Virus record (IMG/VR): IMGVR_UViG_3300005965_000002
Span: 62,001 to 126,000 of that record
Direction: 5' to 3' (one strand)
Length of the DNA: 64,000 nucleotides
The notes below the pieces were generated by a model, which saw only the letters and a program-made list of their open reading frames with translations, was not told the origin of the DNA and did not search any database. Made by a program: the position numbers and the translations under genes. The stretch's first letter is position 1; each line of letters begins with the position of its first letter. Below are positions 1 through 41,211 of this stretch, piece by piece.

Positions 1-2987
1 GGTATCCTTCGACCGATACCGAAAGCTTTTTCGTGTATCTTTAAGGTTATAGGTGCCTGATTTCTTTTAAATTCGTTTCTTCTAACCATACGACCAATCT
101 GGTGGTAGTCGCTTGCACTCATTTGATTTTGTACCCGCAGTATCTCTGCCCAGTCTTCCCTATATGCTTCTCTTCCTTCAATAAATACCTTTAGTCTCGC
201 ATCTAGAAGAGGATAAGGGGGCAAATTATCAGTATCCTCCTGTCCGGGAGCTAGCTCAGCGGAAGGAGCCTTATTAATGATAGACTCCGGTATTAATTCT
301 TTATTATGAAATTCATTATAGTACCTGGCAAGCTCATAGACTTCCATCTTATAAAGATCACTTAAAGGGGCCAGGCCCCCATTCATGTCCCCGTATATTG
401 TGCAATTATGCGTTTTTACGCCATTTACTGTGTATTCATGGTCTTTTTCTACTGTGAAATCGAACATTTCAACTTCTGTTTCCACAGTTTCTAATTTTTT
501 AATAGCGGCGTAGTATGTCTTACTCTTAATTCTATCTTCCAAAGCAACCGTGATATCACTTTTATTTTTAATTGTATCAAGAAATTTTTTAAGAATACTT
601 CTTCCAATCCACTTACTATTTTTATTTAAGTGCCTTCGAATAGTCCCATTTACCTTCCAATGTGTGTTGTCCTTGATGTGTGATAATTCACAGTGTGTTA
701 TAGGAACAACATCATAGCTGGTTTTTATTTTTTTTGTGTTTTTTGTGTTATTATATAGTCTATTAGCTATACTTTTCTTCAGGATTTTAAAATTTAACAA
801 TTTTTCTGATTCTATTGCCGGTATATACACTTCGTGTAAGTTTTTCCTGGACCTAATATAGGAAACTACCCCCAAATTCAACAAAATTAGATGTAACTTT
901 TCTACTAATTTATAGCTAACACTATGGTATAGGATTTCTGACGTATTTTTGTTACCGTTGCTAGTACTATCTAAAAAAACACCTTCAATGAAAGGTTTTA
1001 CAAGATTTAGCGGGGCTCTCATAATGCACGCCGGTACATCTTTATTATGGGAACCATGTTCAATTCCTAAATGTCTTAAAAAACTGTTAAACTGAACACT
1101 ACATATTTCTATAAAAAAGCAACCTCTTTGGTCTTTTTTTGTAACTTTATACGAGCTTTCTTTTAGCCTTATGCTCTTAAAAAACATTACACAGAAATCA
1201 GAAACATACTTTTTAGAAGTACGTATTCTATAGATACTATCATTTATCCCGGAATAAGAGCCGTCAGCAACACAGATACCTATAAATTTAGATAGATTTT
1301 CATTCAAGTGAGATGGAAAATTAATATCTTGGGATATATAGTCAAATTCTTTTTTTTTGTAAGAAAACGTTATGTCGGTACTTCTGCCCCATATGTTTTC
1401 ACCAAAACTTACTATAGACATGTCTCCTACTTTTAGATTTTTAGCCTCTATAAATTCTTCTTTTCCATTTTTGTGTATCTTTATTTTGTGGTCTTCCGAT
1501 ATCTTTATTATATCCCCAAGTATGTTAGTAATTTTGATAAATCTATTTTTAACATTCCTAAATGAGTGCGTAACAGGCATGTCCTTGATAGAATAGGAAT
1601 TTTTTTCGTCAAAAACGCTACGAGCGCTAATTATGCCATTATCCGTAAATATGTAACTATCTCCATGGACACAATAACCCACGGACATCTCACTTTTGTT
1701 TCCTGTGGAAACTAGTAGATACCCAAATTGGTTAGAAAAAGCCATCAAAAGGAGCCCTCTTATACGGGCTTGCATGTTTTGCCTAGTCAAATCTGCGTCT
1801 GGAAGGTCGCCGACAGCGAAAAGAAAATCAGTGAAAACTTTTTCAAATATCCCTTTGATAGGTAGATTCTTTAGCTCTACTCCCAAGTTACTGCATAGCT
1901 TCTCAGAGTCCGTCACACTTCCTATACTAGAATACTCTGATGGCATTGTTACCGCAAAAACTTTGTCCGGACCAATAGCATCAGCGGCCATAGCTATTGC
2001 AACAGCGCTATCTATTCCTCCTGAGGATCCTATTACGATCCCTTTAAAGCACCCAAGTTTAGAAAAATAGTCATGGATACCATTTTTTATCTGTTCGTAA
2101 AAGAATTTTCCAGGGTTATCTTTGTTAATGGGACGCCTGTCATCCTTAGAAAGAAAATCATCTTGTACGGGGATCCCACCGACAAAAACAGATTCTACAC
2201 ATTGTTCGGAATAACTACCTGCGCGTAAGCAGATGTTTCCATTCTGATCTGTTACAAAGCTGTTGCCGTCGAACACTATGGAATCGTTAGCACCTACTTG
2301 GTTAACGTAAACTATGGGAATACCGTACTTCTTGGCGTTATCAGAAACTATTCTTTCTCTGACCCTACGCTTGTTGATCACTGAAGGAGAGGCGTTAATG
2401 CTGATAATAAGGTCGGCGTTTGCTTTGAAGAGATCTTCTACAGGTTTTTTTGAATAAGATTTATTCTCGAACCAAATATCTTCACAGATCAGTAACCCTA
2501 TACGATTACCATTAAAATTAAAGATTCCGGTTTCATTACCCGGTTCAAAATAGCGTGCCTCGTCAAACACATCATACGTAGGAAGCAGTTGCTTGCGATA
2601 TCTGTAAACAATCTTTCCACTTTCTATAACAAGCGCGGTATTAAAAAGGTTTTTGCCTTTACCTTTATTCTCCTCTATAGCTCCTATTATAATTATACCA
2701 GGAAATGTTTTTACCTCTGATAGTACTCTACTTAGTTCGATTTCATGGTCATGAAAAAAAGAAAAGAAGTCCAGAAGATCAAGGGGAGGATATCCTGCAA
2801 GAGCAAGTTCTGAAAAAACTATACAGTGGCTTTGATCGAAACTTTTATATTTGTGTATGTACTCTTCTATTTTTTGGACATAGCTAATGATCTTGTCCGC
2901 ATTACCTTTTAAATCTCCAACTATAAAATTGAGTTGGGCCATGTGGACGCTTAGCGACTTTTGACTACGATTAGTTGAGATATTCAT
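1..2987 (-). CDS. nadE: Glutamine-dependent NAD+ synthetase, intein-containing, 3' end beyond window
   Basis: Manual translation (not in ORF track): MNISTNRSQKSLSVHMAQLNFIVGD..ELALAGYPP..KQLLPTYDVFDEARYF (nitrilase-like glutaminase domain), then SGGIDSA, NMQARIR, TGNKSEMSVGY|intein|CTIYGDMNGGLAPL, KAPSAELAPGQED. ATG at 2987 overlaps the end of pncB; alternative ATG at 2942. Confidence 0.95.
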   Translation of the reverse strand, partial: MNISTNRSQKSLSVHMAQLNFIVGDLKGNADKIISYVQKIEEYIHKYKSFDQSHCIVFSELALAGYPPLDLLDFFSFFHDHEIELSRVLSEVKTFPGIIIIGAIEENKGKGKNLFNTALVIESGKIVYRYRKQLLPTYDVFDEARYFEPGNETGIFNFNGNRIGLLICEDIWFENKSYSKKPVEDLFKANADLIISINASPSVINKRRVRERIVSDNAKKYGIPIVYVNQVGANDSIVFDGNSFVTDQNGNICLRAGSYSEQCVESVFVGGIPVQDDFLSKDDRRPINKDNPGKFFYEQIKNGIHDYFSKLGCFKGIVIGSSGGIDSAVAIAMAADAIGPDKVFAVTMPSEYSSIGSVTDSEKLCSNLGVELKNLPIKGIFEKVFTDFLFAVGDLPDADLTRQNMQARIRGLLLMAFSNQFGYLLVSTGNKSEMSVGYCVHGDSYIFTDNGIISARSVFDEKNSYSIKDMPVTHSFRNVKNRFIKITNILGDIIKISEDHKIKIHKNGKEEFIEAKNLKVGDMSIVSFGENIWGRSTDITFSYKKKEFDYISQDINFPSHLNENLSKFIGICVADGSYSGINDSIYRIRTSKKYVSDFCVMFFKSIRLKESSYKVTKKDQRGCFFIEICSVQFNSFLRHLGIEHGSHNKDVPACIMRAPLNLVKPFIEGVFLDSTSNGNKNTSEILYHSVSYKLVEKLHLILLNLGVVSYIRSRKNLHEVYIPAIESEKLLNFKILKKSIANRLYNNTKNTKKIKTSYDVVPITHCELSHIKDNTHWKVNGTIRRHLNKNSKWIGRSILKKFLDTIKNKSDITVALEDRIKSKTYYAAIKKLETVETEVEMFDFTVEKDHEYTVNGVKTHNCTIYGDMNGGLAPLSDLYKMEVYELARYYNEFHNKELIPESIINKAPSAELAPGQEDTDNLPPYPLLDARLKVFIEGREAYREDWAEILRVQNQMSASDYHQIGRMVRRNEFKRNQAPITLKIHEKAFGIGRRI
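405..1673 (-). mobile_element. Intein (423 aa) with LAGLIDADG-type endonuclease in NadE
   Basis: Starts CVHGDSYIFT, ends GVKTHN, +1 residue Cys. Removal restores GY-CTIYGD. Internal KFIGICVADG and a degenerate FIEGVFLDS block. Confidence 0.9.
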
Positions 2988-4587
2988 TTTTACCAACGCA
3001 GTGAATGTTCAAGATATGATTAGGATTCTTTCTTTTTCTTTTTATATCTCTGGTAATTACTGTCATCAGATTTTGCTCATACTGAGTATCTTCACACATG
3101 CTTTTTGCCGGGTTATTAGATATCTTGGCGACTGGCTGCAGTTCCTCATAATTTCTGCCACACTCTACCATTTTAATTACAAGCTGTAAGGCTTTTGGTC
3201 CGATGTCGTTTGTAAGGTTAGTCCCAACACCGAAAGCTACGCGAATGCGCCCGCTGAAGTACTTAGCTAGACGAATAACGGTGGGTATATCTAACCCATC
3301 ACTGAAAACTAAGGTTTTCGTCCGGGGATCTATACCAAGATGCTTATAGTGGTCAATTAGCCTGTCTCCCCAAAGAAATGGATTCCCACTATCATGTCGA
3401 GCACCATCAAAAAGTTTGGCAAAATATCTGTCAAAATCAGCGAGGAATTTTTCATCTCCGTAAGTATCAGAAAGAACTATCCCGAGGTCCCCTCGGTACT
3501 CTTTAGCCCAGCTATCCATAACAAACTGCTGCGCGTCAGAAAGCCGGGGACCCAAAGCTTGACCTGCCTGGAAGAGCTCATGAGCCATTGTCCCGATGGG
3601 CTTAAGGTCGTAAAACATAGAAAGCATGACGTTACTGGTACCAGACAATACACCAGCTTCTGCCATTGTACTAACTACTTCTTCATGCCACTCACCACTA
3701 AAGCATCTTCGGGTGCCGAAATCTGATATGATTAATTTCTGTCCTGTTTCGGACTCATATTTTTTAACCATCTGTATCTTAGCTTGGAGTCGTTCCCGGC
3801 CTTCATCTAAGTCGGTATTTTTGTGCAGTGCCCGTGTGTAGCATTCATGTACGATTTTAAGTATTTTTACTTCAAAAGGTATCGTATGAAGCCAGGGCCC
3901 CCGAATGACAATATCGAGTTTTCCGTTTTTCTCTTTTACAGTCACGTACTTTCTGCGTAGATAAAACATACGCAAGAAATCTACGTAATCAGGGGAAAGA
4001 AATTTACATTTCTGTTCAATAAAATTAAGTTCTTCTTCTGTATAAGACAAGTTACATATATGGTCAATCTGCTTTTCTATTTCTTTTTTAAAAGGAAGTA
4101 GATCTACTCCATCGGTACGGCATTTAAAACGCGCCTTCATAACTGCTCTCGAACAGTTATGAAGTATATATTGTTGCATGGAGAGCTTATAGAGATCGTC
4201 ATCTGTCATATATTGGATTACATAGGGATCCCCGTTTTCATCCTTCTTGGCAGAATCATTATATATCTTAGACATAAAAGTGCCTTGGCTGTCACTTTCC
4301 GAGACACAAGTCATGGAAATAAATTCAGCCTCAGGATTGGCTTTTTTGATTTCAGGCATGATTTCAGTTTCCGGATCGGAAACTGGATTTTCGGTTTTAA
4401 CAACGAATGTGTCGATTACCATGCCTTCATGCTTATCAAGTACTTCTTGTATGTGCTCGCTTACGTTTTCAATATCTTCAGACACATTATCTCTAAGCAA
4501 GCTTTTCAGCGAATTGACCAATATATTATGGTCTCTCGTTGCAAAGCCCGAACGGGGCCTGATCCAACAGTCTACTAAGTACCTCAC
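2971..4587 (-). CDS. pncB: Nicotinate phosphoribosyltransferase with ~115-aa unknown N-terminal extension
   Basis: DLYK, DFGTRR, GTSN, GTMAHE (phospho-His), DTY, RHDSG, FSDGL and FGVGTNL motifs. Confidence 0.93.
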   Translation of the reverse strand: MRYLVDCWIRPRSGFATRDHNILVNSLKSLLRDNVSEDIENVSEHIQEVLDKHEGMVIDTFVVKTENPVSDPETEIMPEIKKANPEAEFISMTCVSESDSQGTFMSKIYNDSAKKDENGDPYVIQYMTDDDLYKLSMQQYILHNCSRAVMKARFKCRTDGVDLLPFKKEIEKQIDHICNLSYTEEELNFIEQKCKFLSPDYVDFLRMFYLRRKYVTVKEKNGKLDIVIRGPWLHTIPFEVKILKIVHECYTRALHKNTDLDEGRERLQAKIQMVKKYESETGQKLIISDFGTRRCFSGEWHEEVVSTMAEAGVLSGTSNVMLSMFYDLKPIGTMAHELFQAGQALGPRLSDAQQFVMDSWAKEYRGDLGIVLSDTYGDEKFLADFDRYFAKLFDGARHDSGNPFLWGDRLIDHYKHLGIDPRTKTLVFSDGLDIPTVIRLAKYFSGRIRVAFGVGTNLTNDIGPKALQLVIKMVECGRNYEELQPVAKISNNPAKSMCEDTQYEQNLMTVITRDIKRKRKNPNHILNIHCVGKNEYLN

Positions 4588-4662
4588 ATTAAGCCTCCAA
4601 AAATAAGTAAAGTTTCGAGCGCAAGAGATAATATACTTTTTTAAAATGCCCGGTTTAAAGCA

Positions 4663-5760
4663 TTAACTAAAAAAATTATCTACCGTGTTTACGCACAGAG
4701 TATCGATATCGTTGATATTAGGTGACTTAGGTAGAGTAGATTTCTTATACAATTCTGTGAGTTTTTGGTCACAATCATGGGCATACTGCTCTATTTTGTC
4801 ATATGACCAAGCTCCGTTTCTGATAGCCCGTAGCTCATCAGCATCAATATCCGTACGGTCTACGTTTACCTTTTCGGTTTCTAAGATCTCAAGACCCATC
4901 CTCAAGAGTCGGACCAAGTGTGCGGCGTTTTTAGCGTCAAATCCGTATTTTTCTTCAAGCTCAGCACGAGCCTTATTTCTGGATTTTTTCCATTCATAGT
5001 ATCTATCCCAGTCTCTTTTAGCTTCATAATAGGCAACCTCTTTTTTGGCTTCCTGTACGTATTCCTCTTTGAGGTAATTATCCCCGAGAGATATAAACGT
5101 ATTAGCCTGGGCTTTAATGCCACACTGCAGCCATTCCAGAGCAGTTTTTCTTTGCTCCGGGATCAAAAACTGGGTATACAGAGGAATTACATAATCCCCG
5201 TAAAGCCTGTCTAACTCATCCAAAAAATTCTGTTTCTCTTCTTCTATAATAAATTCCAGAGCGGCACTTACTACTGCTTTAAGCTGAGAAGTCGGAAATA
5301 TTGAGGGATTTCTTAGGCCAAACTCTTCTCTTTCGGGTGATTTTTTAGGAGGATCTAAAAGAAATTTTCTATGGGTTTTTATGCGGTTAAGTTGTGCAAT
5401 TGCATACCCGGAAAAAGTATACCTGCATCTCTTAGTCACGAAGATATCTCTGTTTTCAATAAAAGTATCCCAGTAAGGGCTTCGGGTAATAACACATCTG
5501 TCCGGCATCCATAAAAGATCCATCATATTAGGATTGTTATCGGAAATCAACCTTAGAGCTTTACGGATATCATAGCAAACGCGATCTTTTTCTTCGAACC
5601 CACGAAACTGTTCAAACTTTTGAAATCCGAAAAAATATTCTTTACCTGGAATCATGACGCCTGCTTTATCATAATCTGATTCGGCATGGTGTATACCGTA
5701 AGCTCTGCTGCCTACTACAGTCTCAAATATGATTCTGGGTAATACATAAGAAATTTCCAC
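4663..5760 (-). CDS. Pol-beta superfamily nucleotidyltransferase (Nuc-transf/YcgL/RlaP-like)
   Basis: GSRAYG..SDYD motif, NNPN, C-terminal GFDAKNAAHLVRL..IRNG. Confidence 0.8.
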   Translation of the reverse strand: MEISYVLPRIIFETVVGSRAYGIHHAESDYDKAGVMIPGKEYFFGFQKFEQFRGFEEKDRVCYDIRKALRLISDNNPNMMDLLWMPDRCVITRSPYWDTFIENRDIFVTKRCRYTFSGYAIAQLNRIKTHRKFLLDPPKKSPEREEFGLRNPSIFPTSQLKAVVSAALEFIIEEEKQNFLDELDRLYGDYVIPLYTQFLIPEQRKTALEWLQCGIKAQANTFISLGDNYLKEEYVQEAKKEVAYYEAKRDWDRYYEWKKSRNKARAELEEKYGFDAKNAAHLVRLLRMGLEILETEKVNVDRTDIDADELRAIRNGAWSYDKIEQYAHDCDQKLTELYKKSTLPKSPNINDIDTLCVNTVDNFFS

Positions 5761-5985
5761 TTTATCTTCTCCTTATTTTTGTTATCAATATACTTATCAA
5801 AGCGCTTTAATTAAAGAAAAAGAAAATTTTTATTATAGGATAAAAGTGCTCAATTCTACTTTAATTCTCCAAAAACCTCTGTTATATTAATATGATTTCC
5901 CTACCTTTTTAGGTCTAATAATTCTTTAATACGCCCTCTTGAGTTAAAATAGAGACGGTATAAAATGAAAGGATGTGTTTGAAAA

Positions 5986-8900
5986 ATGTTTAAGACTGCA
6001 CTAGCCTATGAGAATTGGAAAACCAAATATCGGTACGAGAACGAGACCCCCGAAGAAACTTTCCTCAGAGTCGCAAAGGCTCTAGCTTCAGTAGAAAAAG
6101 ACCCTGAATATTGGACTGATAAATTTTATAGAACTCTTGTTAAGCTTAACTCAGAAGGTGAAGCCATAGGCTTAAAATGCACTCCCGGGGGGCGTATTAC
6201 AGCTAATGCGGGAACGGATTTCAAGCATGCAACTCTCCTCAACTGCTACATTTCGGGGGCTGTTTCTAATGCTGAAATAAAATATCCTAGAAAGACCTTT
6301 GATAATAAGCTTGCTCACGATATCGTCTATAAGTCCGATAAAAATCCTGATGATCTTATTAATATATTTTTAACTATTCTGGAGCAAGCTAAAACCCTTG
6401 CTTCTGAAGGAGGGTATGGGATAAATTTTGATTTTATCCGCCCTAGAGGATCCTTAATTAAGGGTACCGGAATAAAGCACCCAGGCGTAGTTAGCTATAT
6501 GAAAATATGGGATTCCGTTTCGGAATGTATAGTAAAAGGTACAAATGATGGGTATATAGATAAACTAAAAAATTACTTAAATAAAGAAGATTTTAATGAT
6601 ACTAAGGAAATAGTAAAATCCATGACCCGTAAGGGAGCTATGATGGGTGTTCTTAGTTGTGTTTCTGGAGACACCTTAATTTCTACCATAGACGGTTTGA
6701 TTCCTATTAAACAATTAGTAGGAAAAAATCCTCTTTTATACTGTACAGGTAAGGATAGAAACATATACGTCAGAAGAGCTAATAAAGTATGGAAGACAGG
6801 AAAAAGAAAAACGCTAAAGATATTATTAGACAATGATACTCATTTGATATGCACTCCTGACCATAGAATTATGCTACATGATGGGTCTTATAAGGAGGCT
6901 AAAGACTTGGTATTAGGAGACTCATTGTCAGCATTCTATAAAAGTATTTATTGTAGAAAAGGTATTTACAAAACAAGTGCTTATAAACAAATAGGTATTA
7001 CTGGTCAAAAGAAAACCATACCTGAGCACAAAGCCGTGTGTGAATTTAAATACGGTATGTACCCCGAGATAGTTGTCGAAGAGGATGGAGTTTCCTATTC
7101 GGATAATAGCCAAGTCATACACCATATAGACGGGAATTCATTAAACAACTCCCCTGACAATATAGAACTTATATCTTTTTCAGAACACGCTGATCGCCAT
7201 AAAGAAGAAACAATAAGAATATTCGATAAAAATAGAAAAAGAATAGCAAAAGAAAGAAAAGGAAAAACTTGGGAAGAGTATTACGGACCAGAAAAAGCTG
7301 CTATTTTAAAGAAGAGAGCCAGTGAAAGAATTAAATTAAAAAGAAAAGGTAGCTGGAATAAAGGTTTAAATGGTGCTAAGTATAAGGAACATTATCAGAA
7401 CGGATTTAAAAATCAGTTTGAAGAGGCCAACACTTGGGAAGAAGCGTATGGTTTAGAGAAAGCTTTATCGGCAAAGAATAAAAAGAAAGAAACTCTTGCT
7501 AAAAATACCCTTAGTAACCATAAAGTAATAAGTGTCTCAGATTATGAAGAAATTGATGTTTTTGATATATCTGTGCCCGATTTTCATAATTTTGTGGCTA
7601 ATGGTATCTTTGTTCATAATTGTAGTCATCCTGATATTGAAGAGTTTATCAGAGCAAAACAATCCTCCGGAGTTTTAACCAAGTTTAACATATCAGTACT
7701 TATAGACGACAAATTCATGGAAGCCGTAAAAAAAGATAAACTCTATGATTTGAGCTTTAATGGCAAAATATACAAAAGGGTAAAAGCTAAAGACTTGTAT
7801 AATATTATCATGGAATCAACATATAATAGAGCGGAGCCTGGAGTTCTTTTTGTTGATAACATGCATCGAAATAATCCGCTATCCTATTTAGGTAAAGCTA
7901 CATGCTGCAATCCCTGTGGAGAGGTGCCGGGTTTGGGCTCTTTAACAACAACATGTTTATTGGGGTCTCTTAATCTTACTCAATATGTATTAGCTTACGA
8001 TAAAGAAACAGGTGCTAAATTAAAGAAACCTATTTTTGATTGGGAACAATACGAAGATGATATAAAAGTATTTACTCGAATGCTTGATAATGTAAATGAT
8101 ATTACTTATAACTCTCTTCCCTCTTATGATTGGGTTACTAAAAACATACGTCAGTTTGGTATGGGGATAAATGGTTTAGGATCTGCTTTATCAATGTTAA
8201 GAATTCCATATAACTCCAATAAATCCCACCAATTTGTTAAAAAAGCTGTATCCATTAAAGAGAATATAACCTGGCAAACTTCAGCTTTGTTAGCAAAAGA
8301 AAAAGGTACATTTCCAGCATATGATAAAGAACAATTTGAATCTACTGAATATTTTAACTCAGATCGCATAATAGACGAAACCCGTGAAATGCTCCGTAAA
8401 TACGGAGCCCGTAATGGAAAGACGACGACAAACCCGCCTCTTGGTAATACCTCAGTAATCTGCGACAATGTATCTAATGGCATAGAGCCTGTCTTCATGC
8501 TTGAGTATGAGCGTAAGGCTATCTGTAAAGATTGGCCTGAGGGTGTAAATGGGGAAAATATTAAAAAGCTCCTCAAGAAATATGATGAGAATGACTATAC
8601 ATATTGGCGGGGTGACATAAACGGAAAGACTTATTATTATGAGCCTCATAATAGAGGATTGTGTGGGGTAACAACAGTCCGCGACTATGGTTATCAATGG
8701 TTACTTGATAATTATCCCGAAGAAGATCATAGCGAGTACCTCGTAACCACAGATAAGCTCACTGTGGATGATCACGTAAACTTGCAGAGTATTGTTCAGT
8801 ACTACTGCAACCAGTCTGTTTCTAAAACTTCAAACCTTCCTTTTGGATATCCTTTTGATGAGTTTAAAGACCTTTATATGAAGGCTTGGAAGAAGGGTTT

Positions 8901-9519
8901 GAATGGTTTCACTACTTATCGTAGCGGATCTATGGAATCTGTTATTTCAGAAATAAGCAAAGCAGAAGAGAGCAAAGAGATTATAGCCCGGGACATAAAG
9001 CTTCCTACTGAATTCGTTAATGGCCCTACTCGGGTAATCAAAAGAGAGCAAATGAAGTTTTACATTCATTTCTCTTATTTACCTGAAGACTCCGAGATGG
9101 TATTCCCGGTTGCTATGTGGATATATACTAATGATAGAAACAAAGATAACTCTCGTATATGTAACAAAGCTTCACGCAATTTGGCTAAGCTGGCGCTAGA
9201 TTGCGGTGTTGATAGGGAAATTGTAGAGAAAGCCCTTGATAAAGCTAAAAAAGATTATCCACATAATAGACTTGGTAGGATGATCTCGCTATGTATGAGG
9301 CATAACGTTAGCCGAGATGATATACTGGTGTCTTTAATGGGTATTGATGGTGATCATATTTCTACACTATTAACTGCCGTACGAAAGTTTATAGGAGAGA
9401 CCATTAAGGATGGTACTAAACTAAAAGGTTACAGATGTGAAGAGTGCAATGGAGATAATGTAATCTTAGAAGGTGGTTGTAAAAAATGTCAGGACTGTGG
9501 CTTTAGTGGTTGTGGTTGA
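5986..9519 (+). CDS. nrdJ: Class II (B12-dependent) ribonucleotide reductase, intein-containing
   Basis: PGGRI, NC, GGYG..F..IRP, HPDIEEFI, EPG, NPCGE, CLLGSLNL, GIEP, QSVSKT, TTYR. C-terminal TSCPD-like domain and CxxC..CxxC ribbon. No beta subunit nearby. Confidence 0.92.
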   Translation: MFKTALAYENWKTKYRYENETPEETFLRVAKALASVEKDPEYWTDKFYRTLVKLNSEGEAIGLKCTPGGRITANAGTDFKHATLLNCYISGAVSNAEIKYPRKTFDNKLAHDIVYKSDKNPDDLINIFLTILEQAKTLASEGGYGINFDFIRPRGSLIKGTGIKHPGVVSYMKIWDSVSECIVKGTNDGYIDKLKNYLNKEDFNDTKEIVKSMTRKGAMMGVLSCVSGDTLISTIDGLIPIKQLVGKNPLLYCTGKDRNIYVRRANKVWKTGKRKTLKILLDNDTHLICTPDHRIMLHDGSYKEAKDLVLGDSLSAFYKSIYCRKGIYKTSAYKQIGITGQKKTIPEHKAVCEFKYGMYPEIVVEEDGVSYSDNSQVIHHIDGNSLNNSPDNIELISFSEHADRHKEETIRIFDKNRKRIAKERKGKTWEEYYGPEKAAILKKRASERIKLKRKGSWNKGLNGAKYKEHYQNGFKNQFEEANTWEEAYGLEKALSAKNKKKETLAKNTLSNHKVISVSDYEEIDVFDISVPDFHNFVANGIFVHNCSHPDIEEFIRAKQSSGVLTKFNISVLIDDKFMEAVKKDKLYDLSFNGKIYKRVKAKDLYNIIMESTYNRAEPGVLFVDNMHRNNPLSYLGKATCCNPCGEVPGLGSLTTTCLLGSLNLTQYVLAYDKETGAKLKKPIFDWEQYEDDIKVFTRMLDNVNDITYNSLPSYDWVTKNIRQFGMGINGLGSALSMLRIPYNSNKSHQFVKKAVSIKENITWQTSALLAKEKGTFPAYDKEQFESTEYFNSDRIIDETREMLRKYGARNGKTTTNPPLGNTSVICDNVSNGIEPVFMLEYERKAICKDWPEGVNGENIKKLLKKYDENDYTYWRGDINGKTYYYEPHNRGLCGVTTVRDYGYQWLLDNYPEEDHSEYLVTTDKLTVDDHVNLQSIVQYYCNQSVSKTSNLPFGYPFDEFKDLYMKAWKKGLNGFTTYRSGSMESVISEISKAEESKEIIARDIKLPTEFVNGPTRVIKREQMKFYIHFSYLPEDSEMVFPVAMWIYTNDRNKDNSRICNKASRNLAKLALDCGVDREIVEKALDKAKKDYPHNRLGRMISLCMRHNVSRDDILVSLMGIDGDHISTLLTAVRKFIGETIKDGTKLKGYRCEECNGDNVILEGGCKKCQDCGFSGCG
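6658..7620 (+). mobile_element. Intein (321 aa) with HNH endonuclease in RNR
   Basis: VLS|CVSGDTLIST ... CTPDH ... FVHN|CSHPDI. Internal HHIDGNSLNNSPDNIEL (HNH). Confidence 0.93.
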
Positions 9520-9555
9520 TAAATAACATATTCATATAATATCTAAGGAGTTTGT

Positions 9556-10185
9556 ATGTCCATGGAACACGTAAAATCATTTCTAAACGGCTTTGAAAAT
9601 GCAGAAAAAGCCAAGCTACTTGAAGAGTTAACTACTGCTCTCTCAGACCAGGGACAAGTCTTGTGTGTTACACCGGAAAAAGTTATTCCACCATTGCGTG
9701 TAAAGAAACTTTTTGACGATGCTATCATTCCTACAAAGAGCCATGAAACTGATAGCGGGTTTGATCTTTATGCTTATAAGGTAGAAAAACTATACGAAAA
9801 TAATGAGGCGGTGAGTTTGGAAAGCTATGCTTCTCCAAGCATTTCAAAAGAAATTTACTTACTTCCGGGTCAGAGGTGCCTTATTAATACTGGCATCTCT
9901 GCAACCGTAGGGCCTGGTTTTGAAATTCAGATACGTCCTAGGAGTGGTAACGCCTTAAAGAAGGGTATTACTGTTCTGAACACCCCCGGTACTATCGATG
10001 AGGGTTACAGAGGTATGATTGGTGTCATCCTACAAAATGCCTCGGATTCTCAGGTTACTATTAATATGGGTGACAGAATAGCTCAAATGGTAGTTTGCCC
10101 CGTGGTTTTATCTAAAATTCAAGTCGTTGAGGATTTAGACGTGACAGAAAGAAATGATGGTGGCTTTGGTCATACAGGTAATTAA
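9556..10185 (+). CDS. dut: Trimeric dUTPase
   Basis: SGFDL, RPRSG, NTPGTIDEGYRG, RIAQ and RNDGGFGHTG motifs. Confidence 0.96.
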   Translation: MSMEHVKSFLNGFENAEKAKLLEELTTALSDQGQVLCVTPEKVIPPLRVKKLFDDAIIPTKSHETDSGFDLYAYKVEKLYENNEAVSLESYASPSISKEIYLLPGQRCLINTGISATVGPGFEIQIRPRSGNALKKGITVLNTPGTIDEGYRGMIGVILQNASDSQVTINMGDRIAQMVVCPVVLSKIQVVEDLDVTERNDGGFGHTGN

Positions 10186-11212: not shown

Positions 11213-12115
11213 TTAGTCCTTCTCTATACTGATGATTTTTTTATACAGTACAATTGTTTCTTCAGAAGGGGTTATATCTTTTTCTACAAAAATTATTCTT
11301 ATTCTTCTAGGGTAAGGAAGCTCAGGACGTTTATCTATAATTTCTGGATCAGAGTTATCAGGGGCGAACTTAACTCTAAATTTTTTATCGTATATAGTAA
11401 CTACTATTGGTTCTCTTATAATTTTTCTTAAGGGGTGTATTGATATATACTTTTTAAATCCCCACCCATCGAGGAGTATCCTGCTTTTTTCTTCTAAATT
11501 TATTTTAATGTGAACATCCCCAAAATTGCCATTAAGATCTTGGTTTCCTTTACCTCTCACTATAGCAGTTTTTTCATTACATTCTTTAAGATCTACTCTG
11601 AACTCTATAGGAATTACTTGAAAGGTAAACTTGGTACCGGAGCACTTCGGGCAAGCAGAGTCTTTCTTATAACCTATACCCTCGCAAGACGGGCAAGTAG
11701 GATCGTTATTTAATAGCGACATTACTTTGTTTTTTATCTTACCTTTGCCGGAGCAAATGTCGCAGATACCATCTTTTTTAAGATAGCTTCCTGTGCCTTC
11801 ACAATCGGCGCACAGCACCCGTCTGTTGATATGTATATACTTGGGCCTGCCAAAGTATATATCATCGATAGAGACGGTTACAGACGTGTATATGAAGCCT
11901 TTGGTGTGGGTAGGTTTGCTTGTTTGGATCTGATCTAAAATAGAAGGGTCTTCTCTAATGCTTTTTATCGCCCTAACTATTTCAGAAAATTTTTTAGCAG
12001 TCTGAGGATCTTTGGTTTTATCGGGGTGGTATAGTATAGCTAAACGTTTGAAGCTTTTTTCTGCTTCTTTGTAAGTACATCCGAGGGGTAATTCTAAAAC
12101 ATCTAATGGATTCAT
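11213..12115 (-). CDS. dnaJ: DnaJ-like co-chaperone
   Basis: J domain with HPD, four CxxCxGx Zn repeats, C-terminal GxG..GD; lacks the G/F-rich region. Confidence 0.88.
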   Translation of the reverse strand: MNPLDVLELPLGCTYKEAEKSFKRLAILYHPDKTKDPQTAKKFSEIVRAIKSIREDPSILDQIQTSKPTHTKGFIYTSVTVSIDDIYFGRPKYIHINRRVLCADCEGTGSYLKKDGICDICSGKGKIKNKVMSLLNNDPTCPSCEGIGYKKDSACPKCSGTKFTFQVIPIEFRVDLKECNEKTAIVRGKGNQDLNGNFGDVHIKINLEEKSRILLDGWGFKKYISIHPLRKIIREPIVVTIYDKKFRVKFAPDNSDPEIIDKRPELPYPRRIRIIFVEKDITPSEETIVLYKKIISIEKD

Positions 12116-16994: not shown

Positions 16995-17519
16995 TCATTT
17001 TGAGCTATGATCGTTACTATGGTCATAAAAAAAGTCGTCGTTCAAGAAATGTATAGTATCCACGTAGTTGCAAAACCTCTTATTAAAGCTAGAACCCTTC
17101 ACGGACCACACATCTACAGTTTTTCCATGATCCTTTAAGTATTTACAGAGGTCGATAAAATCTCCATCCCCGGACATTAAAACCCATTTATCGAATTTAT
17201 TTATCATCCTCATACAATCAATACAGATTGCCATATCCTGGTCGGTGCCTGTATAGGTGACCCCACCTCCACCCTTATTATAGTAATCTACATGTTTATA
17301 TGCTTTTTTGATAATGAGCTTGTACTTTAGATTCTTTAAAAATTGTTCAAACTTATCACTTTGAGCGTCTGGGGTCCTGATTATATAGGCGTACATCCCT
17401 ATAATATCATCACCACTTTTGTCAAAGTATTCCTTAATTTTTAAGAAGTCGATCCTTTTTTGCTTATCCTTTGCGGAAAAAAACAGATTTTGTACATCCA
17501 GTTGTACGAAGGTTCTCAT
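16995..17519 (-). CDS. NYN domain (LabA/DUF88, PIN-like) nuclease
   Basis: DVQN, DQDMAICID, LMSGDGDF, GKTVDV. Confidence 0.88.
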   Translation of the reverse strand: MRTFVQLDVQNLFFSAKDKQKRIDFLKIKEYFDKSGDDIIGMYAYIIRTPDAQSDKFEQFLKNLKYKLIIKKAYKHVDYYNKGGGGVTYTGTDQDMAICIDCMRMINKFDKWVLMSGDGDFIDLCKYLKDHGKTVDVWSVKGSSFNKRFCNYVDTIHFLNDDFFYDHSNDHSSK

Positions 17520-18130
17520 ATTTTTTTCTCTACCTTTATATTGCTATCTACCAATTTTACTTCATACTCGTTTTTCGCGTGCTCTGCTAAGTTAGGATTG
17601 TGGGTTATTATCAAGATGTCCATTCCTAATTTAGTAGAGAGCTCAGATATTAACTTGCTAACATTTTCTATATAAAGACTGTCGACGGCTCCGAAGCTTT
17701 CATCTAGCATCATAAATCTTTGCTTCTTCAGTTTTATGATACTTAGGATTCTTAGTATCGTGCTCTCGACTACTTGCACGCTGCTTTTGGAGCTAGGGTT
17801 AACTAATTTACCATTATAATAAGTTTGTAAGTCAATAAATAGCTTTTTCCTTTTTTCCTGTACTTCAGATTGGAACTTCATATCCCGGTCAGTAAAAACT
17901 GTGTTGAGTCCGTACGTAACAAGCTTATCCATTTTGGATAAATCATTTTGTATAAGCTTATCTATAAGGTACTTTAGTACTTTCTCTGTTTGAGTAAGTT
18001 CTTCATCTTCCTTAGTAAGACTGCTTACTTCTTTTTCAATTTTTTCGAGCTGATCCTTTTTGGCTTTATAGATACCTTCGAGGTATCGCACTCGATCTAA
18101 AAAATCGTCTAGTTTTTCTGTATCTATCAT
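17516..18130 (-). CDS. SbcC/Rad50 C-terminal half
   Basis: Coiled coil, Walker B MMLDE, D-loop FGAVD, H-loop IITH; no Walker A. Confidence 0.82.
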   Translation of the reverse strand: MIDTEKLDDFLDRVRYLEGIYKAKKDQLEKIEKEVSSLTKEDEELTQTEKVLKYLIDKLIQNDLSKMDKLVTYGLNTVFTDRDMKFQSEVQEKRKKLFIDLQTYYNGKLVNPSSKSSVQVVESTILRILSIIKLKKQRFMMLDESFGAVDSLYIENVSKLISELSTKLGMDILIITHNPNLAEHAKNEYEVKLVDSNIKVEKKI

Positions 18131-19290
18131 GCTTTAATAACTCTTGAGTAGCTACCGATACCAACACTGATATACTTGTTATCATTGTCAGCACCAGTCT
18201 TATATAATTTGAAAAATGGCTTATCATTGTCCATATATAACTCTAGCAGCCCGTCCGAGCCAAAAGACGACAGAACTGTTTTAAATAGCTTGTAGGATAC
18301 CGTCCTCGTAACTTCATCGTTGTCATCATCAATTCTTACGCAACTGACTGTCTCAGTACATTCCAGGTTACCTATCATGGACATAGTTAGCTTAGCATCA
18401 GATCCAGTGCCTGAGAGATTTAGCTCTATCCCTGTTGCAGCTAAATCCTTAGAAGTTATTACAAGCCTGTCGAGGCACTTAATCAAAGTATTCTTATCCA
18501 CCTCTATATGGGGCCCCTCAGATTTGATCATGTCTTTCTTTATCTTAGGGGTCTCGATTGCTGACTTTAGAAATGAAAAATATAGGTTCCCTGCTAAATC
18601 GGTTACACCTATCTCTTTGTCGTTTTCGAATACTTTAACAATCTCCTCTCCGCTAGTGCTGAGAGTCCCTGAAAAAGAAGGGATAGCAGTCTTACGAATC
18701 TTGGTATTATCAAAAGGCTTAAAGGTTTTGCTTAGAAAAAATCCTATTTTATTGCTCCCGTTTGCACTGTAAGCTATGCTGTCATGAAGTATCAGAAAAT
18801 CATATTTTCTGACTTCATCCTTTAAGGGGGTCATATAATTTAGCGACCATTTTAGGATATTTGACAAGGTTTCAGAAGATATCTCACATATTACGTCGTC
18901 CTCATCTACCGTACCGCTGAATGTAAGCATTTTATCGGGAGGAAAAGACTGAAATGACGTAAAAGATTTACCGGCTTGAGTAGTATATATTTTTACTACT
19001 AAATCTTCGGGGTTGATCTCTATTCTAACTTGCTCTGTATCTATCTTGGAAATGAGCTTATCAATGATCTTAGGGTCAATTGTAAAAGACATCTCACTTT
19101 TATCTTGATCGATTACATCGATAGACACGCGGCACTTAAGATCATTATTGGTACCAACAATAGATAGCTTACTGTCTTTTACAGAACAAAGTAAATGCGC
19201 ACGTTCTTCTTGCAGAACTACTTTAGATAGTGAAAGCTTTGCCGTATCTACAGCTTTTTTAAATTCTGCTTTATCCACTATGATTAGCAT
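18127..19290 (-). CDS. dnaN: DNA polymerase III beta sliding clamp
   Basis: 387 aa with a three-domain beta-clamp pattern (GTNNDL, FP, SANG); clamp loader genes are in the same window. Confidence 0.75.
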   Translation of the reverse strand: MLIIVDKAEFKKAVDTAKLSLSKVVLQEERAHLLCSVKDSKLSIVGTNNDLKCRVSIDVIDQDKSEMSFTIDPKIIDKLISKIDTEQVRIEINPEDLVVKIYTTQAGKSFTSFQSFPPDKMLTFSGTVDEDDVICEISSETLSNILKWSLNYMTPLKDEVRKYDFLILHDSIAYSANGSNKIGFFLSKTFKPFDNTKIRKTAIPSFSGTLSTSGEEIVKVFENDKEIGVTDLAGNLYFSFLKSAIETPKIKKDMIKSEGPHIEVDKNTLIKCLDRLVITSKDLAATGIELNLSGTGSDAKLTMSMIGNLECTETVSCVRIDDDNDEVTRTVSYKLFKTVLSSFGSDGLLELYMDNDKPFFKLYKTGADNDNKYISVGIGSYSRVIKA

Positions 19291-19291
19291 A

Positions 19292-19552
19292 TTATCCCTC
19301 GATCTCTTCTAATTTCTTTGCAGCTGCATCTAAATTACTTTCAAGATCAGATACTAATTTAGAAAACTCGGATTCTTTTTCTTTTATTACATTTTTGAGT
19401 TCACTAGGTTTGTACCCGGCATCTGTGATTTCTTTGACGACTTCAGAAAGAGCCTTTTTCTTGGCTTTATATTGTTCTTCGAGCCTGATTTTTTGAGTTT
19501 CTAGCTCTTTAGCCTTCTGCTTTAATTCCTGAAATTTCTCTAAATCAGACAT
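19292..19552 (-). CDS. Small coiled-coil protein
   Basis: Heptad-rich 86-aa ORF. Confidence 0.6.
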   Translation of the reverse strand: MSDLEKFQELKQKAKELETQKIRLEEQYKAKKKALSEVVKEITDAGYKPSELKNVIKEKESEFSKLVSDLESNLDAAAKKLEEIEG

Positions 19553-19603
19553 GAATATACCTTTCTTCTATCATAATATAGTAGGCGGTCAATAAAAATT
19601 AAA

Positions 19604-20434
19604 CTAAAACCCAATATCTATAACTTCCCCGTTGCTATCTTCCTTTATTGAGCTTCTTTTTCTTCTATTTGCTTGTTTCTTTTGATTAAACTCATCACAC
19701 ATTGTTTGCCAGGCGCACCACTTACAGTGCTTTGAGAGCTTAACGTTGGGTTTGAATTCTTTGTCCTCTTTGATAGTCTTTTTTACGAGCGCCAGCTTGT
19801 TCTTAAATTTGATTATGTCATCCATCGTAAAATCTATGTAGTCTATTAATCTTAACTTGAAGTATAAGAATCCTATTTTATCCGGGAGTTTTCTGTGATG
19901 TAAAAGATATGCTAAAGCATAAAAGTATAACTGCTCCACATCGACGTTTTTTCCGACTTTATCAGTACCTTTACCGTCTAAAATTTCTATAGTACCGTCC
20001 GGGCAATGATGTATAAAATCTATCTTAGCTACTAATTCATCACCGCTTTTTTTCAAATTAATGACATACTTCTTCTCAGAAATGCAATTTGACCAAAAGT
20101 CGAACTTTTTAAGTACCTCCAAGGCATCTTGATAAACTAATTCAAATATGTCTACAGATGAATATTTTACCCAAGGATCGTCCCACACAACGTGGTTTCT
20201 ATCGAGCACTTTTTTCCACAAACGCCGGAGTAACCCTTTAATGACTTCAGGAGTAAAATCCGGTACCTCTCTTATGTAGTATTTTACATAGTATTCGAAA
20301 AACATCTGTATTAAAATACCATACAGAGCAAAATACTTACTAGGTGGGTATGGTGGCGGTACCCTGTTTATTTGGTAATAGAATTGCCTCGGGCAATCTT
20401 TATAGGTTTTATAATTTGAATATGACAGCCTCAT
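19604..20434 (-). CDS. PD-(D/E)XK RecB/Cas4-like exonuclease
   Basis: LSYS..CPR, E..KID..ILDGK, QLYFYA, CKWC..C. Confidence 0.85.
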   Translation of the reverse strand: MRLSYSNYKTYKDCPRQFYYQINRVPPPYPPSKYFALYGILIQMFFEYYVKYYIREVPDFTPEVIKGLLRRLWKKVLDRNHVVWDDPWVKYSSVDIFELVYQDALEVLKKFDFWSNCISEKKYVINLKKSGDELVAKIDFIHHCPDGTIEILDGKGTDKVGKNVDVEQLYFYALAYLLHHRKLPDKIGFLYFKLRLIDYIDFTMDDIIKFKNKLALVKKTIKEDKEFKPNVKLSKHCKWCAWQTMCDEFNQKKQANRRKRSSIKEDSNGEVIDIGF

Positions 20435-21426
20435 TTATTCACACCTTTCAGAATAAGGTCCGCTTCGTCCATATAATGCTTAACCCTATCTATTATATTT
20501 TGACCTATATTTATATCTTTAATCTGATCATCTATTTTATCTATATCTGTTTCTTTTTCTTCTAACTCTGTTTTTAACTTTTCAACGAACTCAACAGCCT
20601 TCTCAATTTTTTCCTTTTGCTTCTTTTTACGCTCTATGTAGAAAGCTTCTTCTGCTGGACGGACTTTTAGCTTTACTATTTGTATTTTCGGTTTTTTATT
20701 TTCATCTATAGTAACTAATGATATCTTAGGGATTCTTTTAATACTATCCTCAGATAATGAGCCTCTACTAATAGCTCCAACATTTATAAAATGTTGCTCT
20801 TTTGAGGATCGCCTGATTACCTCTACCCCCTGGTCGATATGGTAATGGCCCAGGACAAAAATATCATCACTTAGCTCTGCTATTTCATCATACGAAAACA
20901 ACTTTTTTCCATATAGGTCACCACCTTTTTTTGTACTATAAAGATGGAGGACGCAAACAGAAAATTCATCATTTTTACTCTTGGGTATATCTTCAAAATT
21001 TGGCTCTTCAACAAAGGGAAAACTTCTTAGATTAATGCTGAATTTATTTTCCCTATCCCAGACTTCTTCATTTCTTAGCTGGGTAAGAGCCCCGCTTTTA
21101 TACAGAACATTCAAAGGCTGCTTATCGAATTGTTCATAGCTGTCATTTCTTAAGTCATGGTTGCCCTCGGTCATGTATATAGGAGCCGGGAAGGACTTAA
21201 AAAGTTCTATAAGCAATGAAGTAAGCTCGTGAGAATTTCTCATCGGAGCCTTTAAATTAAACAGATCACCGGCACAGATAAAGAAATCCACATTGAGTTT
21301 CTTACCCACAGCTTTAATCTGCTTAAGCTTGTGGAGAATATCATCACGATAAGACCCTTTTCTATTCTCAGGGTTTATATCGCTGATATGGACATCGGTA
21401 AACGTTATGAATTTAATGTCACTCAT
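20431..21426 (-). CDS. SbcD/Mre11 metallophosphoesterase nuclease
   Basis: DVH, GDLF, GNHD, GHYH; start taken at MSDIKF (21426). Confidence 0.9.
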   Translation of the reverse strand: MSDIKFITFTDVHISDINPENRKGSYRDDILHKLKQIKAVGKKLNVDFFICAGDLFNLKAPMRNSHELTSLLIELFKSFPAPIYMTEGNHDLRNDSYEQFDKQPLNVLYKSGALTQLRNEEVWDRENKFSINLRSFPFVEEPNFEDIPKSKNDEFSVCVLHLYSTKKGGDLYGKKLFSYDEIAELSDDIFVLGHYHIDQGVEVIRRSSKEQHFINVGAISRGSLSEDSIKRIPKISLVTIDENKKPKIQIVKLKVRPAEEAFYIERKKKQKEKIEKAVEFVEKLKTELEEKETDIDKIDDQIKDINIGQNIIDRVKHYMDEADLILKGVNK

Positions 21427-31916: not shown

Positions 31917-31941
31917 TAACTTATCCTCCTGTGGTAGTTTA

Positions 31942-34563: not shown

Positions 34564-34571
34564 AGGAAATA

Positions 34572-35480: not shown

Positions 35481-35551
35481 TAATCTTTTTATTATTAAGG
35501 TAAAGCGGAGACTACAGTGACTGTAAGAAGCATAAAAAAAGGGTATGCCGG

Positions 35552-36872: not shown

Positions 36873-36875
36873 GTT

Positions 36876-37193: not shown

Positions 37194-37206
37194 AAAATAG
37201 TACATA

Positions 37207-38317: not shown

Positions 38318-38343
38318 TATTAATAGATAATAAGGAAACTTAC

Positions 38344-40243: not shown

Positions 40244-40250
40244 GAAAGAC

Positions 40251-41198: not shown

Positions 41199-41211
41199 CA
41201 GGGGAGGACAT

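What the first reader, a model, noticed from the sequence alone, without database searches (positions are those of the whole stretch)
1..4587. Phage-encoded deamidated-route NAD+ synthesis module (PncB plus glutamine-dependent NadE)
Seen: overlapping pncB and nadE with intact catalytic motifs, behind a promoter-like motif at 4630-4645. Established: described phage NAD+ reconstitution routes are amidated (Nampt/NadV plus NMNAT, or Adps plus Namat) and counter NAD-depleting defences such as Thoeris and SIR2-domain systems. Inference: this pair defines a different Preiss-Handler route (nicotinate to NaMN to NaAD to NAD+). The adenylyltransferase step is not in the window and may lie beyond the left edge or be supplied by the host.
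Basis: partly seen in the sequence, partly recalled or inferred. Interest (0 to 1): 0.8.

Follow-up and report, generated by a model that had tools for sequence, protein, structure and literature searches.

The report
Phage NAD salvage genes, intein-split NadE

Summary
The two genes are real. pncB lies at 2971-4587 (-). A glutamine-dependent nadE runs from 2987 or 2942 (-) and ends 8 codons beyond the left edge. Both lie on a 258,580-bp viral contig seen in several hypersaline lake and microbial mat data sets, so this is not host or chimeric DNA.

Three points change the picture.

1. nadE is not intact. A 423-residue LAGLIDADG intein (405-1673) splits the synthetase motif ...SVGY|CTIYGD. Splicing residues are intact. 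The same intein sits at the same site in ten other metagenomic NadE proteins. It is scattered over the extein tree, with exteins 98.6% identical with and without it, so it looks mobile.

2. Clustered pncB and nadE are not a new route. A pncB-nadD-nadE cluster in jumbo phages was described by annotation alone in 2024. Of 29 viral contigs with this NadE, 19 carry a NAPRTase within 10 kb and 6 also carry a NadD-like gene.

3. No adenylyltransferase or working nicotinamidase was found in the 74 kb examined, so the host must supply those steps, or the 185 kb I did not read does.

A counter-defence role is plausible (an Acb2/Tad1-like gene lies 5.4 kb away) but untested. Verdict: a new member of a known kind. 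Moderate interest.

The parts
2971..4587 (-). pncB, nicotinate phosphoribosyltransferase, 538 aa, GTG start. Residues 122-538 (2971-4224) are the enzyme. Residues 1-~101 (4285-4587) are an extra N-terminal domain.
   Evidence: Pfam NAPRTase_N and NAPRTase. Match to 1yir at E 4e-102, with GTMAHE at 3571-3594. The start is conserved in L005.
4285..4587 (-). N-terminal domain fused to PncB. It belongs to a family of ~100-aa phage proteins that otherwise stand alone directly downstream of RlaP-like genes. Function unknown.
   Evidence: Profile search: 46 representative clusters, and only this lineage is fused. Contexts in L004, L022, L047, L048, L050, L051. AF2 model pLDDT 87, with no significant PDB fold match.
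1674..2987 (-). nadE N-extein: glutaminase (CN_hydrolase) domain plus the first part of the NAD synthetase domain. The likely start is ATG 2987; the gene caller's start is 2942.
   Evidence: Pfam. Alignment to 5kha residues 9-411, ending exactly at ...SVGY. Triad codons lie within 2790-2816, 2580-2600 and 2472-2495, and the PP-loop at 2004-2027.
405..1673 (-). NadE intein, 423 aa, class 1 (Cys1 ... His-Asn, then Cys+1), with a two-motif LAGLIDADG homing endonuclease.
   Evidence: Pfam Intein_splicing and LAGLIDADG_3. Block A 1647-1673, block B 1476-1502, LAGLIDADG motifs 1254-1295 and 957-995, block F 432-470, block G 405-428. Same site and conserved blocks in 10 homologues. Contigs of four other runs bridge the junctions.
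1..404 (-). nadE C-extein (CTIYGDMNGG... to ...GIGRRI). The gene continues for 8 codons plus a stop beyond the left edge.
4594..4598 (-). Shine-Dalgarno GGAGG, 6 nt before the pncB GTG.
   Evidence: Read directly from the sequence.
4630..4659 (-). Promoter-like motif TTTAAA-18-TATATT between the RlaP-like gene and pncB. Not above chance.
4663..5760 (-). RlaP-like Pol-beta nucleotidyltransferase, the same-strand gene upstream of pncB. Probably RNA repair and not part of the NAD route.
   Evidence: Pfam RlaP 75 bits. phrog_388 at E 7e-53. The literature describes RlaP as an RNA-ligase-associated NTase. The RlaP-small-protein pair occurs without NAPRTase in L050.

Best explanation
This is an accessory two-gene nicotinate-salvage (Preiss-Handler) cassette of a 259-kb phage from hypersaline lakes and microbial mats.

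Proposed route:
1. PncB converts nicotinate plus PRPP (with ATP) to nicotinate mononucleotide (NaMN).
2. An adenylyltransferase makes deamido-NAD (NaAD). None was found in the 74 kb of phage DNA examined, so this is most likely the host's NadD.
3. NadE amidates NaAD to NAD+, using ammonia tunnelled from its own glutaminase domain.

NadE is translated as a ~1,003-aa precursor. It can only become active after a 423-aa LAGLIDADG intein splices itself out of the conserved synthetase motif SVGY|CTIYGD. The intein is a selfish mobile element that circulates among phage nadE alleles.

The net effect would be more NAD+ in the infected cell. Whether that mainly feeds phage NAD-consuming enzymes or offsets NAD-depleting defences is not resolved.

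Shown here: gene identities, catalytic and splicing residues, phage context, recurrence of the cassette, and the intein presence/absence pattern. Inferred: enzyme activities, splicing, dependence on the host NadD, and the benefit to the phage.
For: - Domains and residues.
- Phage origin and independent recovery: terminase and protease genes; IMG/VR contig of 258,580 bp; a 99.995%-identical ENA contig; contigs of four further runs from 2017 and 2022.
- Recurrence: of 29 viral NadE loci, 19 have a same-strand NAPRTase within 10 kb, 10 of them directly upstream, and 6 have a NadD-like gene. The literature describes a pncB-nadD-nadE cluster in jumbo phages.
- Accessory nature: relatives with the same backbone carry both genes (L003, L004, L005, L022), NAPRTase only (L048), or neither downstream of the RlaP-small-protein pair (L050, a 4.3-kb contig).
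- No NadD: no Pfam hit in the ORFs of 120 aa or more that were scanned, and no hit to a phage NadD profile in any ORF of the window plus L001 (best E 2.4).
- Intein: the same site in 11 proteins, with blocks A, B, F, G and both LAGLIDADG acidic residues conserved. Nine gains or losses are needed on the extein tree. P0005 (with intein) and P0016/P0017 (without) have exteins 98.6% identical, and their insertion-site residues differ (SVGY|CTIHG vs STGF|CTYGG). Mostly third-codon-position SNPs cluster right beside the intein between strains.
Against: - No activity, splicing or expression data. All the runs found were DNA.
- About 185 kb of the phage genome was not examined and could hold an adenylyltransferase or a nicotinamidase.
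- The start of nadE is ambiguous.
- The function of the extra N-terminal domain on PncB is unknown, and it could alter the enzyme's behaviour.
- The extein tree was built on sequences picked by similarity to an intein-bearing query and with a quick method. Two intein rows sit on long branches.
Confidence: 0.72

Rival explanations
1. The cassette is a dedicated counter-defence pathway (in effect a fourth, deamidated 'NARP'). It rebuilds NAD+ after Thoeris, SIR2, DSR or RES-type NADases deplete it.
For: - All characterised phage NAD+ pathways act this way.
- An Acb2/Tad1-hairpin protein (Pfam E 6e-14) lies 5.4 kb downstream of nadE on the same contig.
- In another phage, the intein-bearing nadE sits next to a Gad1 anti-Gabija homologue and a MazG-NadD fusion.
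- The cassette is variably present among close relatives, as anti-defence genes often are.
Against: - NADases release nicotinamide, but PncB uses nicotinate.
- No functional nicotinamidase was found. The isochorismatase-like protein lacks the catalytic Lys and Cys.
- No adenylyltransferase in 74 kb, so two host steps would be needed while the host is under attack.
- No experiment supports it.
- The 2024 annotation study reads such genes as a general NAD supply.
Confidence: 0.3
2. NadE acts one step earlier, as in Francisella. It would amidate NaMN to NMN, and an NMN adenylyltransferase would then finish the route.
For: This route exists in bacteria (Sorci et al. 2009, cited). It would equally explain a pncB-nadE pair without nadD, if the host has NadR or NadM.
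Against: From my own knowledge, the Francisella enzyme is a single-domain ammonia-dependent NadE. This protein is the two-domain glutamine-dependent type, closest to 5kha and 4f4h (E 1e-71 and 5e-68). In six viral loci the partner gene is a NadD-type enzyme with the GGxFDPxHxGH motif.
Confidence: 0.05
3. The left end is host or chimeric DNA, or the genes are decaying remnants.
For: The enzymes are bacterial-type (PncB matches the Pseudomonas enzyme at E 4e-102). nadE is interrupted.
Against: - The same arrangement was assembled independently in JGI, ENA and Logan data.
- Base composition is continuous.
- Synteny with RNR, RlaP and patatin genes is conserved in related viral contigs.
- Both reading frames are open, with all catalytic residues present.
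- The interruption is an in-frame intein with intact splicing residues.
Confidence: 0.03
4. The RlaP-like Pol-beta nucleotidyltransferase just upstream supplies the missing adenylyl-transfer step.
For: The order RlaP, small protein, NAPRTase(NadE) is conserved in this phage clade, even where the NAPRTase is of a different type. The small protein is fused to PncB here.
Against: - The RlaP-small-protein pair occurs without NAPRTase or NadE (L050).
- No RlaP lies near pncB-nadE in viral contigs outside the clade.
- RlaP is described as an RNA-repair enzyme.
- From my own knowledge, all known NaMN/NMN adenylyltransferases have the HIGH-motif Rossmann fold.
Confidence: 0.02

Closest known systems
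Preiss-Handler gene cluster of 'NAD-jumbo phages' (Kuafu_71 pncB-nadD-nadE; PMC11662467)
   Same: A genome over 200 kb with clustered pncB and nadE, predicted to make NAD+ from nicotinate. Known only from annotation.
   Different: No nadD within 74 kb. NadE carries an intein. PncB carries an extra N-terminal domain. The source is a hypersaline lake or microbial mat, not a gut.
NARP1 (Adps + Namat), NARP2 (Nampt + Nmnat), NARP3 (PnuC + NadR-like)
   Same: Phage-encoded enzymes that raise NAD+ in the infected cell.
   Different: Those routes use amidated intermediates, are complete within the phage, start from NADase products or imported nicotinamide riboside, and are shown to defeat defence systems. 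This one starts from nicotinate, lacks the middle step and is untested.
Bacterial PncB (P. aeruginosa 1yir) and glutamine-dependent NadE (A. baumannii 5kha, Burkholderia 4f4h)
   Same: Full-length alignment, the same domains and the same catalytic residues.
   Different: The phage PncB has ~120 extra N-terminal residues. The phage NadE is split by an intein.
LAGLIDADG inteins such as the archaeal V-ATPase A-subunit inteins (7qss, 7qsu)
   Same: Hint splicing domain with a nested two-motif LAGLIDADG endonuclease, Cys1, His-Asn, and a Cys/Ser/Thr at +1. Inserted in a conserved nucleotide-binding motif. Best PDB sequence match, E 7e-8.
   Different: The host protein is NAD+ synthetase. Full-text searches found no paper that mentions inteins together with this enzyme.

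Membership tests
Nicotinate phosphoribosyltransferase (PncB, type II PRTase) | NAPRTase_N plus catalytic barrel domains above the Pfam gathering scores | tested here: met
   105 and 213 bits against cut-offs of 32.6 and 20.8.
Nicotinate phosphoribosyltransferase (PncB, type II PRTase) | End-to-end similarity to a solved PncB, including the conserved GTxAHE histidine | tested here: met
   1yir residues 11-393 at E 4e-102, with GTMAHE aligned.
Nicotinate phosphoribosyltransferase (PncB, type II PRTase) | Nicotinate-specific, ATP-stimulated activity | not testable with these tools
   Needs an enzyme assay.
Glutamine-dependent NAD+ synthetase (NadE-Gln) | Nitrilase-type glutaminase domain with a Glu-Lys-Cys triad | tested here: met
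   CN_hydrolase 73 bits. E45, K117 and C153 are invariant in A1.
Glutamine-dependent NAD+ synthetase (NadE-Gln) | PP-loop SGGxDS and a contiguous synthetase domain | tested here: inconclusive
   The PP-loop is present. The domain is interrupted in the gene. Conceptual splicing restores SVGY-CTIYGD exactly as in intein-less homologues. Splicing itself was not tested.
Class 1 intein with LAGLIDADG homing endonuclease | Cys/Ser at position 1, block B (T/S)xxH, C-terminal His-Asn, and Cys/Ser/Thr at +1 | tested here: met
   C1, SEDH, THN and C+1, conserved in all 11 proteins.
Class 1 intein with LAGLIDADG homing endonuclease | Two LAGLIDADG motifs that keep their acidic residues | tested here: met
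   GICVADGS and GVFLDS are conserved across homologues. Pfam LAGLIDADG_3 at E 3e-4, just under the cut-off.
Class 1 intein with LAGLIDADG homing endonuclease | Sporadic presence among closely related host-gene alleles | tested here: met
   Nine changes on the extein tree. Pairs with and without the intein have exteins 98.6%, 92.5% and 88.8% identical.
Class 1 intein with LAGLIDADG homing endonuclease | Protein splicing and site-specific DNA cleavage | not testable with these tools
   Needs expression and cleavage assays.
Phage NAD+ reconstitution pathway used as counter-defence (NARP) | Uses the products of NADase defences (nicotinamide, ADPR) as substrates | tested here: not met
   The entry enzyme is a nicotinate PRTase. 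No functional nicotinamidase was found in the window.
Phage NAD+ reconstitution pathway used as counter-defence (NARP) | All steps to NAD+ encoded by the phage | tested here: inconclusive
   No adenylyltransferase in 74 kb. About 185 kb of the contig was not read.
Phage NAD+ reconstitution pathway used as counter-defence (NARP) | Rescues the phage from NAD-depleting defence | not testable with these tools
   Needs infection assays.
'NAD-jumbo phage' with a complete Preiss-Handler pathway (PMC11662467) | Genome over 200 kb encoding pncB, nadD and nadE | tested here: inconclusive
   Contig of 258,580 bp with pncB and nadE. nadD was not found in the part examined.

The most novel reading that the evidence does not exclude
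The pncB-nadE pair is a fourth, deamidated-route phage counter-measure to NAD-depleting immunity. It works by pushing flux through the host's own NadD (and PncA). Its output is gated after translation by the NadE intein, whose two catalytic cysteines would make NAD+ synthesis depend on splicing conditions in the infected cell.
Probability: 0.1. Interest if true: 0.7.

Novelty: new member of a known kind. Interest (0 to 1): 0.4.

Why it matters
Only amidated phage NAD+ routes have been tested as counter-defence. The survey here shows that a NAPRTase-NadE pair, usually without NadD nearby, recurs in large viral contigs, so a direct test of the deamidated route would be worthwhile. I found no published description of an intein in NAD+ synthetase. 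It marks nadE as a gene these phages keep, gives a natural precursor/spliced pair for studying control of a metabolic enzyme by splicing, and shows signs of ongoing homing in an environmental phage population. The practical lesson is that nadE here would be mis-annotated, or judged broken, if the intein were overlooked.

Tried and rejected
- Near-identical DNA in GenBank phages: none.
- Phage PncA: the isochorismatase-like protein at 36348-36872 has Thr and Asn where the catalytic Lys and Cys should be. Rejected.
- Cryptic adenylyltransferase: no Pfam hit in the scanned ORFs of 120 aa or more, or in the 10 kb beyond the left edge. A profile of eight phage NadD-like proteins gave no hit (best E 2.4). 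A pattern scan of IMG/VR with a MazG-NadD query did not return this contig, which is weak evidence.
- The 149-aa gene just after nadE is a HAD/NT5C-like phosphatase by predicted structure (TM 0.63-0.68), not an adenylyltransferase.
- PncB N-terminal domain as a functional partner of NAD salvage: it proved to be a partner of RlaP that also occurs without NAPRTase. Its fold has no significant PDB match.
- RlaP as the missing enzyme: disfavoured.
- Riboswitch or other known RNA in 1-6200: none.
- Intein-less allele in four other metagenome runs: no joint was seen, but these are contigs, which drop rare variants.
- Tpt1-like NAD-using enzyme at 31266-31970: only a weak match to the C-terminal lobe, and the HGT histidine is replaced by Phe. 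Not used as evidence.
- Literature on an intein in NAD synthetase: none found.
Full report
**What is in the sequence**

The minus strand of 1-4587 holds two genes.

pncB (2971-4587, 538 aa) has both NAPRTase Pfam domains. Residues 122-507 align to P. aeruginosa PncB (1yir) at E 4e-102, including the GTMAHE histidine. The GTG start has a GGAGG six bases upstream. A 78%-identical homologue on contig L005 begins with the same residues.

The second reading frame is open from 3008 to the window edge. It encodes a nitrilase-type glutaminase domain followed by an NAD synthetase domain. The Glu-Lys-Cys triad and the SGGIDS loop are invariant across homologues. The full protein (P0001, 988 aa from the gene caller's ATG at 2942) ends 8 residues beyond the left edge. 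The closest homologue P0010 and the solved structure 5kha both align through the residues upstream of that ATG.

The promoter-like motif is there (4659-4630), but such motifs are no more common here than in shuffled sequence. No Rfam family matches 1-6200.

The synthetase domain is interrupted after ...GNKSEMSVGY by 423 residues that begin CVHGDSY and end VKTHN. The host protein then resumes CTIYGDMNGG. Pfam reports an intein splicing domain and a LAGLIDADG domain.

All canonical elements are present: Cys1, a block B SxxH, two LAGLIDADG motifs with their acidic residues, block F, His-Asn, and a Cys at +1. Removing the insert restores the motif exactly as it stands in intein-less NadE proteins. 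The nearest solved relatives are archaeal V-ATPase inteins (E 7e-8).

**The intein looks mobile**

- Ten further metagenomic NadE proteins (39-51% identical to the query) carry a homologous intein at the same site.
- On a tree of the exteins, the 11 intein-bearing sequences are scattered. Nine gains or losses are needed.
- Some alleles with and without the intein have nearly identical exteins. P0005 versus P0016/P0017 is 98.6% identical, P0009 versus P0020 is 92.5%, and P0007 versus P0018 is 88.8%. In the first pair the residues at the insertion site itself differ (SVGY|CTIHG vs STGF|CTYGG).
- Contigs from four other runs (hypersaline lake and microbial mat; two of 2017, two of 2022) cover this region. 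Those of three bridge both intein junctions and that of the fourth bridges one.
- A strain variant in two of those runs differs from the window by 10 SNPs within 1683-1734 and 9 within 287-399, mostly at third codon positions. These clusters sit right beside the intein, while only 6 SNPs fall within the 1,269-bp intein itself.

This pattern is what co-conversion during homing would leave. Splicing and cleavage themselves were not tested. The tree rests on a similarity-selected sample and a quick method.

**Origin**

The window is phage DNA.
- A large terminase (phrog_2, E 4e-22) and a head maturation protease are in the window.
- So is a large replication and recombination set: Pol III beta-like, clamp-loader subunits, RecA, RuvC-like, SbcCD-like, a RecD2-like helicase, a primase-like protein, a 5'-3' exonuclease and RNR.
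- The source contig is 258,580 bp, JGI 3300005965 Ga0081527_100007, listed in IMG/VR as UViG_3300005965_000002.
- An independent ENA assembly matches 21.5 kb around the cassette at 99.995% identity.
- Composition is even across the left end.

The 'host or chimeric' refutation therefore fails.

**Is the pathway complete?**

No, at least not in the 74 kb I could read.
- Pfam scans of the window's ORFs of 120 aa or more, and of the genes in the 10 kb beyond the left edge, found no HIGH-motif adenylyltransferase, NadR or Nudix protein.
- A profile built from eight phage NadD-like proteins found nothing in any ORF of the window plus L001 (best E 2.4).
- The genes after nadE are a HAD/NT5C-like phosphatase, a Cys-rich 124-aa protein, a patatin-like lipase, and further on an Acb2/Tad1-hairpin protein (Pfam E 6e-14).
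- The isochorismatase-like protein at 36348-36872 lacks the catalytic Lys and Cys, so it is not a nicotinamidase.

The host NadD (and PncA, if nicotinamide is the source) would have to serve, unless the unread 185 kb encodes these enzymes.

**How common is the arrangement?**

A pattern scan of IMG/VR with the NadE alignment returned 29 viral contigs, many of them 100-570 kb.
- 19 have a NAPRTase within 10 kb on the same strand.
- 10 have it directly upstream of nadE.
- 6 also have a NadD-like gene with the GGxFDPxHxGH and SSTxIR motifs.
- Only the window's own contig had the intein in that scan.

Two other intein-bearing nadE genes sit in different phage-like contexts. One lies beside a MazG-NadD fusion and a Gad1 homologue (L007). 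The other lies between Nudix genes with a NAPRTase 2.6 kb away (L008).

Among close relatives of this phage the cassette is variable. Both genes are present in L003, L004, L005 and L022, where L003, L004 and L022 have a different NAPRTase type. L048 has NAPRTase only. L050, a 4.3-kb contig, has neither downstream of the RlaP-small-protein pair. This is accessory-gene behaviour.

**Literature**

The experimentally shown phage routes (NARP1, NARP2, NARP3) are all amidated. A 2024 metagenomic study had already described jumbo phages with Preiss-Handler genes, including a pncB-nadD-nadE cluster, and read them as a general NAD supply. GenBank also holds large phages that encode both genes, annotated in Atu_ph07 and unannotated in LR756511. 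The route is therefore not newly defined here.

I found no paper that mentions an intein in NAD+ synthetase. That does not exclude a database listing.

**Side feature: the extra domain on PncB**

The first ~100 residues of PncB belong to a small family: 46 representative clusters among 1.84 billion proteins, and all the others are free-standing proteins of ~100 aa. In every context examined that showed the upstream gene, the family member lies directly downstream of an RlaP-like nucleotidyltransferase, with or without a NAPRTase after it. The fusion here probably arose from adjacency. A confident model (pLDDT 87) has no significant fold match in the PDB. Its function is unknown.

**Verdict**

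This is a new member of a known kind of phage NAD-salvage cassette. Its distinguishing features are a mobile intein in NadE and a fused domain on PncB. A counter-defence role is possible but unproven. It is weakened by the nicotinate entry point and by the two missing steps.

Noticed in passing
window 6658-7620 (+); 28800-29858 (-); 27426-27884 (-); 53209-54702 (+): Four more inteins in the same 64 kb. One is in the RNR large subunit (321 aa, HNH-type). Two are in a RecD2-like helicase: 353 aa in the P-loop GTGK|T, and a 153-aa mini-intein. One (498 aa, LAGLIDADG) is in an unassigned 1,147-aa protein. Five inteins in 64 kb is a high density.
   Followed up: partly
L001 18373-18687 (about 5.4 kb beyond the window's left edge): A 104-aa protein with the Acb2/Tad1 hairpin domain (Pfam E 6e-14). 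This is the fold of the phage sponges that soak up CBASS and Thoeris signals. The gene caller did not call it on the JGI contig, but it is 100% identical to the copy on the ENA contig.
   Followed up: partly
window 4285-4587 (-): The PncB N-terminal domain belongs to a rare family of ~100-aa phage proteins (motifs Y.V.CW..P.SGFDL and P.I.K.PEA). In every context that showed the upstream gene, members are encoded directly after an RlaP-like nucleotidyltransferase. Only this lineage has it fused to an enzyme. The predicted fold has no PDB match.
   Followed up: yes
window 287-399 and 1683-1734: Between this strain and the one in runs X3 and X4, mostly synonymous SNPs pile up in the extein DNA immediately flanking the intein, while the intein itself is nearly identical. 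This looks like co-conversion tracts.
   Followed up: partly
L001 12971-13420 (immediately after nadE, beyond the left edge): A 149-aa HAD/NT5C-like phosphatase with an unusual DFHG first motif. It overlaps nadE by 4 nt in relative L005, so the two are probably co-translated. Its nearest clusters are viral hypothetical proteins.
   Followed up: partly
window 36348-36872 (+): An isochorismatase-fold protein in which the catalytic Lys and Cys are replaced (Thr and Asn; the Asp also appears lost). It is a likely pseudoenzyme or binding protein, not a nicotinamidase.
   Followed up: yes
L003 8369-9925, L004 7977-9509, L022 ~8411-9973: Related phages have a different NAPRTase type (24-26% identical in L003 and L004, with the NAPRTase_C domain in L004) in the same slot before nadE. 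The gene appears to have been replaced at the same position.
   Followed up: partly
L007 7614-9500: In another phage, a MazG-NadD fusion and a Gad1 (anti-Gabija) homologue lie directly upstream of an intein-bearing nadE.
   Followed up: no
window 31266-31970 (-): A weak Tpt1/KptA-like protein. It matches only the C-terminal lobe of RNA 2'-phosphotransferase (E 4e-5), and Phe stands in place of the HGT histidine.
   Followed up: partly
window 17516-23853 (-), 33550-41838 (+): A cell-like replication and recombination set: Pol III beta-like, three clamp-loader-like subunits, RecA, RuvC-like, SbcCD-like, Cas4-like nuclease, NYN RNase, primase-like, NusG-like and a sigma-70 region 4 protein. A DnaJ gene lies at 11213-12115.
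   Followed up: no
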